Below are positions 5,408 through 19,263 of a stretch of 19,263 bases of DNA, one piece after another. Under the pieces are notes generated by a model, which had not been told where the DNA came from, did no database searches, and worked only from the letters and a program-made list of their open reading frames with translations. The DNA is from Octopus sinensis. Taxonomy: Eukaryota. A program made the translations under genes and the position numbers. Location of the stretch: contig NW_021824326.1 in NCBI RefSeq assembly GCF_006345805.1, positions 1-19,263 of the forward strand. Reading direction: 5' to 3'. Every line of letters begins with the position of its first letter. The stretch's first letter is position 1.

Positions 5408-5569
5408 CGTGCTGGTACGCCCGTAGCACTGCTTCTAAGTTAAGTATTAAACGTGCAGCTTCCACTTTTTCTTTCACTCTGTTCTTTTTTTTTTATTATA
5501 AACTACAGATGAGCATATTATCAAAAATGAACCTACACGCATCCAGATTATATATACATATATATATGT

Positions 5570-5776
5570 AGTTGATCCAAACAAGAAAGCACAAAAAAAA
5601 CACAACAACGCGAGGACGTGGACAAATAAAGTATTATTGGACGCTCAAGAAAGAAGAAAAGAAGGAGGGTTTAACGTTTCGAGCGGAGCTTTTCGTCGGA
5701 AACATAGAAGAAGGAAAGATCCAGAGAAGGGAAGACAGAGGGAAAAAAATCGCCAACGGTACACACGCGGTCACAT
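5570..5776 (-). mobile_element. ~205-bp hammerhead-bearing short repeat, family H1 copy 1 (Penelope-like terminal repeat/retrozyme-like)
   Basis: Aligns end to end with 12875-13075 and with the start of 17867-17990; hammerhead-like motif at 5669-5703 (-). Confidence 0.8.
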
Positions 5777-6675: not shown

Positions 6676-6826
6676 TATAAGAGAAGAAAATGGATATAAT
6701 AACAATGAGAAACTCATGGTTTATGCTGACATGTCTTTAGTTAAATAGGTAGCCTTTTTAATTAAAGACATGCCAGAGTAAACCATGAGTTTCTCATTGT
6801 TATTATATCCATTTTCTTCTCTTATA
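6676..6826. repeat. Near-perfect inverted repeat (70-bp arms)
   Basis: 6676-6745 pairs with 6757-6826: 66/70 Watson-Crick, 2 G-T, 2 mismatches; inner AGG-TAG-CCT extends the hairpin. Confidence 0.95.
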
Positions 6827-7680: not shown

Positions 7681-7824
7681 TATAAACATACGACTAGGGT
7701 GTTTGGAAAAACCTACATTGCTAGAAATAAGAGCTAAAACTGCTTTCATGCTGTAGTTAACGCGCATGAATGAAAACATACACTAACAGAGACCCTACTC
7801 GTCCGAAAAATGCCGATCGAGAAC

Positions 7825-7871
7825 TCTTAATACTTCAGTTTCTGCGATTTCCGTTGCCTCATCAGTTAAGA
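7825..7871 (-). ncRNA. Type I hammerhead ribozyme motif, degenerate (left arm)
   Basis: TCTTAA-CTGATGA-GGCAACGGAAATCGCA-GAAA-CTGAAG-TA-TTAAGA; core intact, stem II closing pair broken, stem III shortened by 6 nt relative to the right arm. Confidence 0.7.
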
Positions 7872-7939
7872 CAGCTCGACTTCGGCTCTTTCCGGATTCG
7901 CTTCACCATTAGTATTTATGTTTCAGTCATCTCAAGCTG

Positions 7940-7992
7940 TCTTAACTGATGAGGAATCGGAAATTGCCGAAATTGACGCGTTAGTATTAAGA
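7940..7992 (+). ncRNA. Type I hammerhead ribozyme motif (right arm); predicted cleavage after GTA at 7986
   Basis: Stem I TCTTAA/TTAAGA; CTGATGA 7946-7952; stem II GGAAT-CGGAA-ATT(G)CC; GAAA 7969-7972; stem III TTGACGCGTTAG with a central ACGCGT palindrome. Confidence 0.85.
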
Positions 7993-8192
7993 ATTCCCGC
8001 TCGGCAATTTCGGACGATTATGTTCCCTGTTGCGTGTATGCTGTCATTCATGTGCTTTAGCTATAGTATCAGAGCGGTTTAGCTGTTATTTCTTGCAATG
8101 TAGGTGTTTCCTAACAGGCTAATCGCTTTTAGTGACATTTGTAATTCTCCTTTTTGGTGAAACACTGCAAAATGCTTTATATATATATATAT

Positions 8193-8320
8193 ATCACCGT
8201 GATCACCGTGATCACCCTGATCACCGTGACCGACCAGGCAATCAGATGTTGCAATACATCGCAGGTCACAATTCTTTTAGCCTTCAAATGACGCCACCCA
8301 GCTGGCTGAGCGAGCAGGCC
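8193..8320 (-). mobile_element. 3' fragment of SINE family D with a 9-bp tandem-repeat tail (CACGGTGAT)x4
   Basis: Matches 13121-13240; ATCACCGTG units start at 8193, 8202, 8211 and 8220. Confidence 0.85.
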
Positions 8321-8467
8321 ATATACATATACATACATACATACATACTTACATATATATATATATATATGTATATATATATGTATATATATATATGTAT
8401 ATATATGTATATCTATGCATGTATATTATATGTATATATATATATATATATGTATATCTATGTATGT

Positions 8468-10210: not shown

Positions 10211-10977
10211 TATTTCTTTATTGCCCACAGGGGCCAAACGTAGAGGGGACAAGCCAGGACAGACAAAGGGATTAAGTCGATTATATCGACCCCAGTGCGT
10301 AACTGCTACTTATTTAATCGACCCCGAAAGGATGAAACGCAAAGTCGACTTCGGCGGAATTTGAACTCAGAGCGCGAAGACAGACGAAATACCTATTTCT
10401 TTACTATCCACAAGGGGCTAAACATAGAGGAGACAAACAAGGACAGACAAACGGATTAAGTCGATTATATCGACCCCAGTGTGTAACTAATCGACGCCGA
10501 AAGGATGAAAGGCAAATTCGACCTCGGCGGAATTTGAACTCAGAACGTAGCGGCAGACAAAATACCTATTTCTTTACTACCCACAAGGGGCTAAACACAG
10601 AGAGGACAAACAAGGACAGACAAACGGATTTAAGTCGATTATGCCGACCCCAGTAACTGGTACTTATTTAATCGACCCCGAAAGGATGAAAGGCAAAGTC
10701 GACCTCGTGGAATTCGAACTCAGAACGTAGCGGCAGACGAAATACCTATTTCATTACTACACACAAGGGGCTAAACACAGAGAGGACAAACAAGGACAGA
10801 CAAACGGATTTAAGTCGATCATATCGACCCCAGTAACTGTTACTTATTTAATCGCCCCCGAAAGGATGAAAGGCAAAGTCCACCTCGGCGGAATTTGAAC
10901 TCAGAACGTAGCGGCAGATGAAATACTGCTAAGCATTTCGCCCGGCGTGTAACGTTTCAAAACCAGTTTATTGCCTT
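10211..10977 (-). mobile_element. Head-to-tail tetramer of tRNA-derived SINE family A
   Basis: Four ~173-183-bp units (starts 10211, 10394, 10567, 10747); only the unit at the 5' end on the minus strand has the upstream head (10927-10977); each unit has B-box-like GAGTTCAAATTCC. Confidence 0.9.
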
Positions 10978-12834: not shown

Positions 12835-12868
<34 letters not shown>

Positions 12869-12874
12869 ATATAT

Positions 12875-13075
12875 AGTTAATCCAAACAAGAAAGCACAAA
12901 AAAAACACAAAGCGAGGACGTGGAACAAATATAGTATTATTGGACGCTCAGGAAAAGAAAGAAGAAGGAGGGTTTAACGTTTCGAGCGGAGCTCTTCATC
13001 AGAAACATAGAAGGAAAGATCCAGAGAAGGGAAGACAGAGGAAAAAAATCGCCAACGTTACACACGCGGTCACAT
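12875..13075 (-). mobile_element. Family H1 copy 2 (201 bp)
   Basis: Same ends as copy 1 (AGTT(A/G)ATCCAAAC ... CGCGGTCACAT on +). Confidence 0.85.
12972..13006 (-). ncRNA. Intact minimal type I hammerhead ribozyme; predicted cleavage between 12976 and 12975
   Basis: GTTT-CTGATGA-A-GAGC-TCC-GCTC-GAAA-CG-TT-AAAC: stem I GTTT/AAAC, stem II GAGC/GCTC, palindromic ACGT stem III. Confidence 0.8.
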
Positions 13076-13120
13076 TTTGAAAGACCGGAAGGAAATATAT
13101 AAATATATATATATATATAT

Positions 13121-13431
13121 ATCACGTGATCATGTGACCGACCAGGCTATCAGATGTTGCTACACATTGCTGGTCACAATGCGCTTCGCATTGTCTTAGC
13201 CTTCAAATGACGCCACCCAGCTGGCTAAGCGAGCAGGCCAACAGAAGAAAGAGTGAGAGAAAGTTGCGGCGAAAGAGTACAGCAGGGATCGCCACCACCC
13301 CATGCCGGGGCTTCGTGGAGCTTTGGGTGTTTTCGCTCAATAAACACGAACAACGCCCGGTCTGGGAATCGAAACGGCGATCCTACGACCGCGAGTCCGC
13401 TGCCCTAACCACTGGGCCATTGCGCCTCCAC
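13121..13431 (-). mobile_element. Full-length tRNA-derived SINE family D
   Basis: GTGGAGGCGCAATGGCCCAGTGG (A-box) ... GTTTCGATTCCC (B-box); GA-rich middle on +; tail GGTCACATGATCACGTGAT. Confidence 0.9.
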
Positions 13432-13499: not shown

Positions 13500-13988
13500 G
13501 GATAGGTCTTTGTTAAACTTATTAACATTTGAAATCTAGGATGCATCTCCGTGTCTGTGTTTACACATTATTAAATTAAAACTAATGTATATTACTTATT
13601 ACTTGAGTAAAATTGTGGCAAAAAGTAGCAAAATTAGTTAAGTAGTTAACAGTGTAATTTCTTTCAACATATATTTAAATAGAAAATATAAATAAGTTAA
13701 TGTCTTCGACACCTTATGGCTTTTCTTAGACGGATAATATTCAATGTTTGGGTTGTGTTTTGTTAGTTTGTTTATCTGAAATTTTTTGTCGATTTCGAGT
13801 ATAATTTTTTAAAACTATGCATTGTTCTAGATTGGACGTAATTGCACTATATACGTAGACACATATATAAACACATTCATCATACACTCATATATATAGG
13901 CATAAAAACACACACACTAACACATATTTAACGTATATTCCGTAAGGAACGTAGCACAGTACAGTATAAAGCTCGTTCATCCTTAGAA

Positions 13989-14295
13989 GGTCGACCTCGG
14001 CGAATTTTGAACTCAGAACATAAAGACAGACGAAATGCCTATTTCTTTAGTGCCCACAGGGGCTAAATATAGAGCCAGGACAGACAAAAGGATAAAGTCG
14101 ATTACATTGACCCCAGTGCGTAACTGGTACTTATTTAATCGACCCCGAAAGGATGAAAGGCAAATTCAACCTCGGCAGAACTTGAACTCAGAGCGTAGCG
14201 GCAGACTAAATACCTATTTCTTTACTACCCACAAGGGGCTAAACACAGAGGGGACAAACAAGGAAAGACAAAGGGATTAAGACGATTATATCGTC
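13989..14295 (-). mobile_element. Second SINE family A multimer (partial, full 175-bp and partial units)
   Basis: Junctions GAAATGCCTATTTC (14032-14045) and TAAATACCTATTTC (14207-14220) match those at 10386, 10559 and 10739. Confidence 0.9.
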
Positions 14296-17825: not shown

Positions 17826-17865
<40 letters not shown>

Positions 17866-17866
17866 A

Positions 17867-17990
17867 AGTTAATCCAAACATGAAGCACAAAAAACACAAC
17901 AAACGCGAGGACGTGGAACAATATAGTATTATTGGACGCTCAGGAAAGAAGGAGGGTTTAACGTTTCGAGCGGAGCCTTCGTCGGAAACA
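17867..17990 (-). mobile_element. Family H1 copy 3, truncated just beyond the hammerhead
   Basis: Same AGTTAATCCAAAC end; motif GTTT-CCGACGA-A-GGC-TCC-GCTC-GAAA-CG-TT-AAAC at 17956-17989 (-). Confidence 0.85.
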
Positions 17991-18813: not shown

Positions 18814-19263
18814 CCCATCCAAACCGGGCGATCTGCAACATGTACAATCGGTCATCGCCCGGAAATTTCATCGCCTGTTATCGACCTTTCACATATCCTA
18901 GCATCAGGTGTGGACAACCGCAGCAAGATGTCCAGTCCAGTTACGAGCTCTAAATTCCAAGAACCGTCGTCGACCCGTCGCCCTCTCCAAAGAGCGGCGC
19001 AAAGTGCTGTAGAAAAGCCACACACATCTGCTCGGGGCCGCGTAGCTCGCGCCCATCCCTATCCGTCAAAGACCTGATTGCGGTTTTGTTTCCGAGTCGC
19101 GTCCGCACCGTTGGGGTCCATTGGACAGCTTTAGTTCCTTCCTGTGTGAGCACATGGGCCTTAACTCTAACAACGCAATCTTCGTGTTTCGCTTCGAAGA
19201 AACGGTGATGGCTCAATCTCGCCACAGATTTGCTCAGTTGCTTGGCCTTACCCTGTTGAGCAG
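18814..19263 (-). mobile_element. Degenerate L1/Tx1-type LINE ORF2 fragment (linker region up to the SPGLDG motif before the RT domain), running off the window edge
   Basis: RFFEAKHEDCVVRVK...AIRSLTDRDGRELRGPEQMCVAFLQHFAPLF (18950-19225), then after frameshifts LRLSTPDARICERSITGDEI and AMTDCTCCRSPGLDG, matching the L1/Tx1 'I..L...G.......I......F..LF...LP.LS......E.PIT..EI..A......KSPGLDG' pattern; GC-rich relative to the window. Confidence 0.85.

What the first reader, a model, noticed from the sequence alone, without database searches (positions are those of the whole stretch)
7691..8125. 435-bp fold-back element with a hammerhead ribozyme on each strand
Seen: inverted ~190-bp arms (about 79% identity) around a 52-nt spacer. 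The right arm encodes a well-formed type I hammerhead on + (GTA cleavage at 7986), and the left arm a degenerate one on -. A transcript of either strand therefore carries one sense ribozyme facing its own antisense copy in a long rod. Established: paired opposite-polarity hammerheads in rod-like RNA typify viroid-like RNAs, and Penelope-like elements can have inverted terminal repeats. Inference: most likely an inverted pair of Penelope-like terminal repeats. If the palindrome itself is multicopy, it would be an unusual MITE-like ribozyme element whose cleavage is switched by co-transcriptional folding. No target-site duplication is evident.
Basis: partly seen in the sequence, partly recalled or inferred. 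Interest (0 to 1): 0.85.

Follow-up and report, generated by a model that had tools for sequence, protein, structure and literature searches.

The report
Inverted pair of decayed hammerhead retroelement copies
Two worn-down copies of a short ribozyme-carrying jumping-gene fragment sit head to head in an octopus-type genome; this layout is already known for Penelope-like retroelements and nothing suggests it does anything now.

Summary
Arms 7691-7880 and 7932-8125 are inverted copies (155/197 aligned columns identical, 78.7%) around a unique 52-nt spacer. The right arm carries a formally complete type I hammerhead (7940-7992 +, GUA, cut after 7986). The left arm carries an eroded one on the minus strand (7825-7871).

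My descriptor finds such a motif about 0.003 times per simulated window. No Rfam hammerhead model recognises either copy, and the extant right-arm ribozyme fold is predicted to be disfavoured (+0.3 vs -12.6 kcal/mol).

The host is an octopod: the window shares many repeats with Octopus vulgaris. Both copies point their 3' ends outward, there is no target-site duplication, and no RT/GIY-YIG ORF was found among the 20 ORFs scanned. Substitutions between the arms look neutral (15 transitions, 17 transversions; ribozyme part 79% identical vs 78.5% for the rest; no excess of G-U pairs).

This fits a published pattern. Penelope-like elements often carry an adjacent inverted 5'-truncated copy, and opposite-strand hammerhead pairs 100-700 bp apart are described in Schistosoma.

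The "co-transcriptional switch" idea is not supported, because on either strand the antisense arm is transcribed first.

The decisive copy-number test could not be run: the genome server was closed. Verdict: ordinary decayed retroelement debris, a new member of a known kind.

The parts
7691..7880 (-). Left copy of the repeat (sense on the minus strand; 3' end of the copy at 7691, inner/5' end at about 7880)
   Evidence: Aligns over its whole length with the right copy, 78.7% identity
7825..7871 (-). Eroded type I hammerhead. Helix I UCUUAA/UUAAGA is intact, as are CUGAUGA, GAAA and GUA (predicted cut between 7831 and 7830 on the minus strand). The 10.1-11.1 position is G.A, and helix III is reduced to 2 bp plus a UGAA loop by a 6-nt gap.
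   Evidence: Alignment; sequence read; not found by the strict descriptor; Rfam only a sub-threshold Hammerhead_II hit, 15 bits vs 37
7880..7931 (.). 52-nt unique spacer joining the two inner (5') ends. Its first 20 nt resemble, in reverse complement, the helix II segment of the ribozyme (weak).
   Evidence: No arm homology. Local alignment GAATCCGGAAAGAGCCGAA vs GAATCGGAAATTGCCGAA is reached by 1 of 500 shuffles, in one of four comparisons
7932..8125 (+). Right copy of the repeat (sense on the plus strand; 3' end at 8125)
7940..7992 (+). Formally complete type I hammerhead: helix I 7940-7945/7987-7992 (6 bp); CUGAUGA 7946-7952; helix II 7953-7968 (G-C, G-C, bulged G, 3 A-U pairs); GAA 7969-7971; helix III 7972-7985 (5 bp with 2 G.U, loop CGCG within the palindrome ACGCGU); A17 at 7986; cut after 7986
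   Evidence: Descriptor hit, 1 in the window vs 1 in 300 simulations; energy evaluation
8001..8012 (+). Segment CGGCAAUUUCGG downstream of the ribozyme that pairs with the helix II/GAAA region in single-arm folds. The equivalent segment exists in the left copy.
   Evidence: MFE and centroid structures of each arm alone

Best explanation
This is a head-to-head pair of short, 5'-truncated copies of one hammerhead-carrying retroelement family. The family is either the terminal (pLTR) region of a Penelope-like element or its non-autonomous 'retrozyme' derivative. The host is an octopod genome.

Each copy keeps about 55 nt upstream and 139 nt downstream of the ribozyme cut site and points its 3' end outward. 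That is the geometry expected if both DNA ends of one cleaved target primed reverse transcription of the element's RNA and the two cDNAs were joined in the middle, with the spacer as junction or filler. This step is inferred.

In the parent element the hammerhead processes the element's own RNA (established for the family, not shown here). At this locus both ribozymes and the rod are decaying neutrally. The pair is inert debris, about 0.1 substitutions per site old on each arm. If it is transcribed through, it would simply give a long imperfect hairpin RNA that buries the ribozyme.
For: Shown here:
- The inverted arms are homologous along their whole length and end at the same inner position.
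- The hammerhead core and helices are in the right arm, with an eroded homologue in the left arm.
- Such a motif is expected about 0.003 times per window.
- There is no TSD.
- Divergence between arms is p=0.171, JC 0.194, with 15 transitions and 17 transversions. The ribozyme segment is 79% identical and the rest 78.5%. Rod mismatches include only 9 (+) or 6 (-) G.U pairs against 23-26 non-pairs. This is a neutral pattern.
- A two-copy inferred ancestor restores a perfect 5-bp helix II and a C-G pair in helix III. It brings the hammerhead fold to -8.0 kcal/mol against an MFE of -10.6, compared with +0.3 against -12.6 today. Both copies have therefore decayed from a better ribozyme.
- The host is octopod. 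A SINE ORF hits an Octopus vulgaris protein, and 23 repeat matches of 75-91% identity link the window to O. vulgaris chromosome OX597820.1.

From papers:
- PLE insertions are highly 5'-truncated and often carry an inverted 5'-truncated copy immediately adjacent, forming inverted repeats. Hammerheads lie in the pLTRs (PMC8557442).
- In S. mansoni, dual min-HHRs lie 100-700 bp apart on opposite strands (PMC4209133).
- A purified PLE protein cleaves and extends both target strands, and reverse transcription starts about 85-92 nt downstream of the ribozyme cut site (PMC11167929). This is the same order as the 139 nt seen here.
- PLEs are a major repeat order in O. vulgaris, with an expansion at JC ~0.2 (PMC13282606).
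- Retrozymes are pLTR-derived and occur as dispersed solo monomers (bioRxiv 10.64898/2026.07.22.740005).
Against: - Pattern scans of genome, metagenome and viral contig collections found nothing. 26 kb of O. vulgaris holds no copy.
- No RT or GIY-YIG domain appears among the 20 window ORFs scanned.
- Rfam hammerhead models do not score the motif.
- The ribozyme has a 6-bp helix I and a 5-bp helix III. This is unlike the minimal PLE hammerheads (short helix I, no helix III) and closer to retrozyme-type ribozymes, which are normally in direct tandem, not inverted.
- The equal length of the two arms is not predicted by random 5' truncation.
- Proximity to a (TATC)n array is uninformative, because about 31% of the window is microsatellite.
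Confidence: 0.55

Rival explanations
1. Same repeat family, but the inverted arrangement arose differently. Either there were two separate insertions into one site (PLEs can target their own sequence), or a later DNA-level inverted duplication of a solo copy occurred (template switching or palindrome formation).
For: The arms stop at the same internal position within 1 nt. This is natural if about 190 nt is the full unit inserted twice, or if one copy was duplicated in inverted orientation. The 21% divergence could partly reflect different source copies rather than age. PAc inserts at its own ORF-pLTR junction (PMC11167929).
Against: Adjacent inverted truncated copies are a recurrent signature of single PLE integrations (PMC8557442). 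Two independent hits at the same nucleotide are less parsimonious. No microhomology or TSD marks a second event.
Confidence: 0.25
2. The 435-bp fold-back is itself a multicopy mobile unit (a MITE-like or hairpin 'retrozyme'). Its rod-shaped transcript carries a ribozyme of each polarity, in the manner of viroid-like RNAs.
For: The fold-back makes a very stable rod (z = -20). The arm lengths are matched. Formally there is one sense ribozyme per strand. The test for copy number could not be run, so this is not excluded.
Against: - No TSD.
- No second copy in the window or in 26 kb of O. vulgaris.
- No compensatory or G.U-biased substitution that would show selection on the rod.
- The ribozyme segment is no better conserved than the rest.
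- One ribozyme has lost its 10.1-11.1 pair.
- On both strands the antisense arm is made first and the ribozyme is buried at every transcript length.
- Single arms are not unusually structured, z about 0.
Confidence: 0.07
3. The hammerhead resemblance is spurious. The arms would belong to some other repeat (for example a DNA transposon with long inverted ends, or a C/D-box-like small RNA remnant), and CUGAUGA...GAAA...GUA with flanking complementarity would be coincidence.
For: Rfam's curated hammerhead models do not match at E<=10, apart from one sub-threshold Hammerhead_II hit on the left arm. Weak hits to C/D-box snoRNA models share the UGAUGA/CUGA boxes. The hammerhead fold is not the predicted MFE.
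Against: The descriptor hit rate is 1 per 300 simulated windows. Core, cleavage triplet and 6-bp helix I are identical in both diverged arms. The two-copy ancestor has a perfect helix II and a better helix III. The right arm lacks a CUGA D box, and the C-to-D spacing of about 20 nt is far too short for a eukaryotic C/D RNA. The snoRNA scores are 8-13 bits against cut-offs of 37-75.
Confidence: 0.07
4. The hairpin is a functional RNA gene, for example an endo-siRNA or miRNA-like precursor or an ADAR substrate, exapted from the repeat pair.
For: A long imperfect hairpin is predicted. Sub-threshold hits to miRNA precursor models reflect the hairpin shape.
Against: The miRNA hits are far below gathering score (34 vs 117 bits; 28 vs 62). 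The substitution pattern is neutral. No expression data are available.
Confidence: 0.03

Closest known systems
Penelope-like element insertions with an adjacent inverted 5'-truncated copy and hammerheads in the pseudo-LTRs (Craig et al. 2021, PMC8557442; Cervera & de la Pena 2014, PMC4209133)
   Same: Inverted repeat made of two copies of the element's 3'-terminal region with 3' ends outward. There is a hammerhead in each copy, no clear TSD, the pair sits next to a microsatellite, and the host lineage is rich in PLEs.
   Different: No RT/GIY-YIG ORF or longer copy is attached. Both copies are only about 190 nt and of equal length. The ribozyme has full helices I and III rather than the minimal PLE form. 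Homology to an actual PLE end was not tested.
Dual min-hammerheads 100-700 bp apart on opposite strands in Schistosoma mansoni, attributed to truncated PLEs (PMC4209133)
   Same: Two hammerhead motifs on opposite strands a short distance apart (here the cut sites are 155 nt apart), as dispersed, ORF-less remnants.
   Different: Different phylum and a different ribozyme architecture. The paper gives no detail on whether those pairs are long inverted repeats.
Metazoan non-LTR retrozymes (Cervera & de la Pena 2020, PMC7229834; Li et al. 2026 preprint)
   Same: Classical type I hammerhead with a 6-bp helix I, a 4-5 bp helix II and a palindromic loop 3. Unit size is in the 170-400 nt range, GC is 42% (<45%), and solo 'monomer' copies are known to be dispersed.
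   Different: Retrozymes are defined by direct tandem repeats and highly self-paired circular RNAs. Here the copies are inverted, and each arm alone is not unusually structured (z about 0).
Viroid-like circular RNAs with hammerheads of both polarities (Avsunviroidae, satellite RNAs)
   Same: Formally a rod in which ribozyme sequences of the two polarities face each other.
   Different: This is chromosomal DNA flanked by host repeats. The two ribozymes are diverged copies of one sequence, not two distinct functional domains. One is crippled, and there is no evidence of RNA replication.
LINE-1 twin priming (inversion plus 5' truncation; own knowledge, Ostertag & Kazazian 2001)
   Same: A second priming event on the opposite DNA strand during one retrotransposition yields inverted, truncated segments joined internally.
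   Different: Twin priming copies different parts of one RNA, giving an inversion rather than a duplication, and leaves TSDs and a poly(A) tail. Here the same region is present twice.
MITEs and fold-back DNA transposons
   Same: A short non-coding element made mostly of two inverted arms.
   Different: No TSD, no subrepeats in the arms, arms only 79% alike, and a retroelement-type ribozyme inside.

Membership tests
Hammerhead ribozyme, type I | Conserved core CUGANGA ... GAAA ... U-H cleavage triplet in the right order | tested here: met
   Both arms: CUGAUGA, GAAA, GUA
Hammerhead ribozyme, type I | Three helices around the core, helix I open, G10.1-C11.1 closing helix II | tested here: inconclusive
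   Right arm: helix I 6 bp, helix II 2+3 bp with a bulge, helix III 5 bp, G10.1-C11.1 present. Left arm: G10.1 faces A and helix III is only 2 bp.
Hammerhead ribozyme, type I | Match to curated covariance models (Rfam Hammerhead_1, HH9, HH10, II, 3) | tested here: not met
   No hit at gathering score. At E<=10 there is only a sub-threshold Hammerhead_II match of 15 bits against a cut-off of 37, and that is on a different register.
Hammerhead ribozyme, type I | Self-cleavage at the predicted site | not testable with these tools
   As a proxy only, the hammerhead fold of the extant right copy is +0.3 kcal/mol against an MFE of -12.6. The two-copy ancestor gives -8.0 against -10.6.
Penelope-like element (terminal repeat / truncated copy) | Sequence homology to the end of an element encoding a telomerase-like RT plus GIY-YIG endonuclease | not testable with these tools
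   The genome server was closed. No RT/GIY-YIG domain was found among the 20 window ORFs scanned. The public contig scans were empty.
Penelope-like element (terminal repeat / truncated copy) | Hammerhead within the repeated terminal region, near the 3' end of the inserted unit | tested here: met
   The cut site is 139 nt from the outer end in the right arm. In PAc the RT start lies 85-92 nt from the cut site.
Penelope-like element (terminal repeat / truncated copy) | Complex insertion: 5' truncation with an adjacent inverted truncated copy | tested here: met
   Two copies are head to head with 3' ends outward. The pattern is described in PMC8557442.
Penelope-like element (terminal repeat / truncated copy) | 30-40 bp 'tail' extension at one end; microsatellite or AT-rich target | tested here: inconclusive
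   A tail cannot be recognised without other copies. (TATC)n ends 11 nt from the left end, but about 31% of the window is microsatellite.
Metazoan non-LTR retrozyme | Direct tandem repeats of 170-400 bp, each with a type I hammerhead | tested here: not met
   No direct repeat of the arm exists in the window. The copies are inverted. Solo monomers of retrozymes do exist, so derivation from one is not excluded.
Metazoan non-LTR retrozyme | Highly self-paired unit RNA, expressed as circRNA | tested here: not met
   Each arm alone folds no better than shuffles, z = +0.16 and -0.21. Expression is not testable.
MITE / fold-back DNA transposon | Target-site duplication flanking terminal inverted repeats | tested here: not met
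   No direct repeat of 4-15 bp lies within +/-8 nt of the ends.
MITE / fold-back DNA transposon | Many copies of the whole unit at unrelated sites | not testable with these tools
C/D-box small RNA | Box C RUGAUGA and box D CUGA brought together by a terminal stem, with a guide region between them | tested here: not met
   The right arm has UUGA instead of CUGA. The spacing is about 20 nt. Rfam scores are 8-13 bits against cut-offs of 37-75.

The most novel reading that the evidence does not exclude
The fold-back as a whole (arms plus this spacer) is a mobile, multicopy non-autonomous derivative of a hammerhead retroelement. Its transcript would be a viroid-like rod with a ribozyme of each polarity, and this locus would be an old copy of it.
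Probability: 0.06. Interest if true: 0.6.

Novelty: new member of a known kind. Interest (0 to 1): 0.2.

Why it matters
It matters little by itself. The locus adds an octopod example to the known association of type I hammerheads with Penelope-like elements and retrozymes. It also illustrates the inverted, truncated insertion products that PLE integration leaves behind. No paper found in the two searches that covered hammerheads together with octopus/cephalopods or molluscs describes hammerhead repeats in cephalopods, so a family-level survey of octopus genomes might be worth doing. Cephalopods edit double-stranded RNA heavily, and inverted repeat pairs like this one are potential substrates. 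The locus itself shows only neutral decay.

Tried and rejected

2. Exact and degenerate pattern scans for the ribozyme (a 20-mer, then two helix-II-tolerant patterns) in genome contigs, metagenome contigs and viral contigs: 0 hits each.

3. Looking for spurious ORFs predicted through other copies:
- The search for homologous proteins with the 70-aa frame across spacer plus right arm found nothing.
- A full HMMER scan of 1.84 billion representatives gave three weak hits. On reading, all three are unrelated tandem-repeat proteins, so they are not homologues.

4. Sampling the host genome through annotated proteins:
- A SINE ORF led to O. vulgaris chromosome OX597820.1. Only 26 kb could be reached, and it holds no arm copy and no strict hammerhead.
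- Three window ORFs are not on record.
- The ORF at the window's right end found nothing.

5. Rfam at gathering score and at E<=10 on the whole window, the region and each arm: no usable hammerhead hit. The miRNA, CRISPR-DR, snoRNA and JPX_2 hits were rejected as sub-threshold reflections of the hairpin or the CUGAUGA box.

6. Literature string search for the ribozyme and SINE sequences, and searches of supplements to PMC8557442 and PMC7229834: nothing.

7. Assembly artefact as the origin of the palindrome: rejected, because the arms differ at 21% of columns.

8. A covariance model from the two ribozyme copies: abandoned. MAFFT misplaced the 6-nt gap, and two sequences add nothing over BLAST.

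Full report
**1. What is there**

The sequence 7691-8125 is a 435-bp fold-back. The repeat finder returns a collinear series of inverted blocks (I1, I17, I23, I3, I2) that tile both arms, with 52 nt between the innermost pair. A global alignment of the reverse complement of 7691-7880 with 7932-8125 has 155 identical positions in 197 columns (78.7%) and 10 gap columns. As RNA, the segment folds into a rod of -222 kcal/mol, against -104.6 +/- 5.8 for dinucleotide shuffles (z = -20). The homology stops sharply at both outer ends (...TAGTCG / ...TAATCG) and at the same inner position in both arms.

**2. The ribozymes**

I scanned the window with a hammerhead descriptor of my own: helix I of at least 5 bp, CUGANGA, helix II, GAA, an A15.1-U16.1-closed helix III, then H17. 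It finds a single hit in 19 kb on both strands, at 7940-7992 on +, with cleavage after the GUA at 7984-7986. It found one hit in 300 Markov-simulated windows.

- Helix I is UCUUAA/UUAAGA.
- Helix II is G-C, G-C, a bulged G, then three A-U pairs.
- Helix III is 5 bp (two of them G.U), capped by CGCG inside the palindrome ACGCGU.

The left arm read on the minus strand (7825-7871) keeps helix I, CUGAUGA, GAAA and GUA. It has lost the G10.1-C11.1 pair (now G.A) and lacks 6 nt of helix III.

Each arm differs at two positions of helix II from the sequence GGCAACGGAAAUUGCC, which would form a perfect 5-bp helix. The left arm also keeps a C that would make a C-G pair in helix III. Both copies therefore look like eroded versions of a better ribozyme.

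Energetics agree with this. The hammerhead secondary structure of the present right copy scores +0.3 kcal/mol, against -12.6 for a competing hairpin. The two-copy inferred ancestor scores -8.0 against -10.6.

Rfam gives no hammerhead hit at gathering score or at E<=10 for the whole window, the 651-nt region or the right arm alone. The left arm gives only a sub-threshold, differently registered Hammerhead_II match. 'Well-formed' should therefore be read as 'formally complete'.

**3. Context and host**

About 31% of the window is microsatellite. A (TATC)n array ends 11 nt left of the element. On the right, 65 nt of unique sequence and a (TA)n run separate it from a SINE-like fragment (8190-8321) that recurs at about 13100-13240.

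An ORF through that SINE matches a 'Hypothetical predicted protein [Octopus vulgaris]'. The 20-kb locus around that gene, on chromosome OX597820.1, shares 23 repeat matches of 75-91% identity with the window. The host is therefore an octopod.

None of the 20 window ORFs scanned has an RT or GIY-YIG domain. There is no target-site duplication of 4-15 bp.

**4. Evolutionary signal**

The arms differ by p = 0.171 (JC 0.194), with 15 transitions and 17 transversions. Only 4 of the differences are CpG-type.

- The ribozyme segment is 79% identical and the remainder 78.5%.
- Of the non-Watson-Crick positions in the rod, 9 are G.U on the plus transcript and 6 on the minus transcript, against 23-26 true mismatches.

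Nothing indicates selection for the ribozymes, for the rod, or for one strand.

If the arms were identical when formed, each has accumulated about 0.1 substitutions per site. On the calibration used for O. vulgaris repeats (JC 0.09 about 25 My, 0.2 about 56 My; PMC13282606), that is roughly 25-30 My. This date is an inference that assumes a single origin and that rate.

**5. How it most likely arose and works**

The literature describes this architecture.

- PLE insertions are strongly 5'-truncated, form partial tandems and 'often' carry an inverted 5'-truncated copy immediately adjacent. Their hammerheads sit in the pseudo-LTRs, and target-site duplications are often not discernible because insertion is biased toward microsatellites (PMC8557442).
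- In Schistosoma mansoni, pairs of minimal hammerheads lie 100-700 bp apart on opposite strands and are attributed to truncated PLEs (PMC4209133).
- A purified PLE protein cleaves and extends both strands of its target. It starts reverse transcription 111-118 nt into the ORF, and the ribozyme cut site is at +26, so the copied unit ends about 85-92 nt past the cut (PMC11167929).

Here the unit ends 139 nt past the cut, and the two copies have their 3' ends outward. This is the product expected if both DNA ends primed cDNA synthesis on the element's RNA and the cDNAs were joined at their 5' ends. That mechanism is inferred, not shown.

The ribozyme's job belongs to the parent element (processing of multimeric or read-through element RNA) and is not demonstrated at this locus.

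**6. The ribozyme resembles the retrozyme type more than the minimal PLE type**

Minimal PLE hammerheads have a short helix I, a long helix II and essentially no helix III. Classical metazoan type I ribozymes, now assigned to non-LTR retrozymes, have a 6-bp helix I, a 4-bp helix II and a palindromic loop 3 (PMC4209133, PMC7229834). The motif here is of the second sort.

The arm length (190-245 nt) and GC content (42%) fit the retrozyme range. Retrozymes are reported to be pLTR-derived and to leave dispersed solo monomers (preprint). However, retrozymes are defined by direct tandem arrays and highly self-paired RNAs. Here there is no direct repeat, and single arms fold no better than shuffles.

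I therefore file the arms under 'PLE-type hammerhead retroelement, autonomous end or non-autonomous derivative undetermined'.

**7. The switch idea**

On the plus transcript the left arm, which is the antisense of the ribozyme, is made first. On the minus transcript the same holds for the other ribozyme. MFE folds of the growing plus transcript show the ribozyme region completely paired with the left arm as soon as it is complete, at 7992, 8010, 8060 and 8125. Co-transcriptional folding would therefore favour the inactive rod, not transient cleavage. Only transcripts that start in or near the spacer would carry a free ribozyme.

**8. What could not be done**

That needs the host genome, and the genome search and the fetch from genomes were shut.

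The substitutes all failed:
- pattern scans of three public contig collections;
- protein-space searches for ORFs read through other copies (the three hits are unrelated repeat proteins);
- sampling of O. vulgaris DNA through annotated genes, which reached only 26 kb and found no copy.

The multicopy fold-back reading is therefore unsupported rather than refuted. I give it about 6%.

**9. Verdict**

The exotic alternative has nothing in its favour beyond the shape of the hairpin. This is ordinary, decayed retroelement debris: a new (octopod) member of a known kind, of low interest.

Noticed in passing
window 6676-6826: A 152-bp near-perfect palindrome (92% self-complementary) with arms of about 64 nt, starting TATAAGAGAAG... 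and ending ...CTTCTCTTATA. It looks like a small MITE, possibly with a TA target. It is unrelated in sequence to the hammerhead fold-back.
   Followed up: partly
window 8190-8321 and 13100-13240 (continuing to about 13440): SINE-like repeat fragments, 83% identical to each other. The copy at 8190 starts with an expanded (ATCACCGTG)4 array. An ORF through the longer copy matches a predicted O. vulgaris protein and a SINE copy on OX597820.1.
   Followed up: partly
window 10211-10926 and 13987-14293: A 180-bp unit repeated four times in tandem (87% matches), with further copies 3 kb away. Similar sequence is also present in the O. vulgaris loci.
   Followed up: no
window 5549-5776, 12853-13075, 17845-17990: Another dispersed repeat family, three copies at 86-91% identity. 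At 12853 it lies directly next to the SINE-like fragment.
   Followed up: no
window, whole: About 6 kb of 19.3 kb (31%) is microsatellite of period 2-6, in 24 arrays of up to 630 bp. Overall GC is 32% and CpG observed/expected is about 1.1.
   Followed up: no
window 7945-7973 (+) and 7838-7866 (-): The Rfam lncRNA model JPX_2 (positions 42-69, consensus ACuGAUGAGGcUaGGaGGUUGCAGAAaC) aligns to the CUGAUGA-helix II-GAAA part of both arms at 13 bits. That stretch of the model consensus itself looks like two-thirds of a hammerhead.
   Followed up: no
window 7880-7899: The reverse complement of the start of the spacer (GAATCCGGAAAGAGCCGAA) resembles the helix II/GAAA segment of the right-arm ribozyme (GAATCGGAAATTGCCGAA). 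Only 1 of 500 shuffles reaches the score, in one of four comparisons. It could be a partial duplication at the junction, or chance.
   Followed up: partly
window 8001-8012 (and the equivalent in the left arm): In both copies, a 12-nt segment just downstream of the ribozyme is complementary to the helix II/GAAA region. It dominates the centroid fold of the right arm alone and appears in the MFE fold of both arms. This may be an ancestral alternative pairing that competes with the active fold.
   Followed up: no
window 18950-19261 (-): A 103-aa non-repetitive frame that runs off the right end of the window. It has no Pfam family above threshold and no relative in the protein collection. Its nature is unknown; it may be a retrotransposon ORF fragment.
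   Followed up: partly
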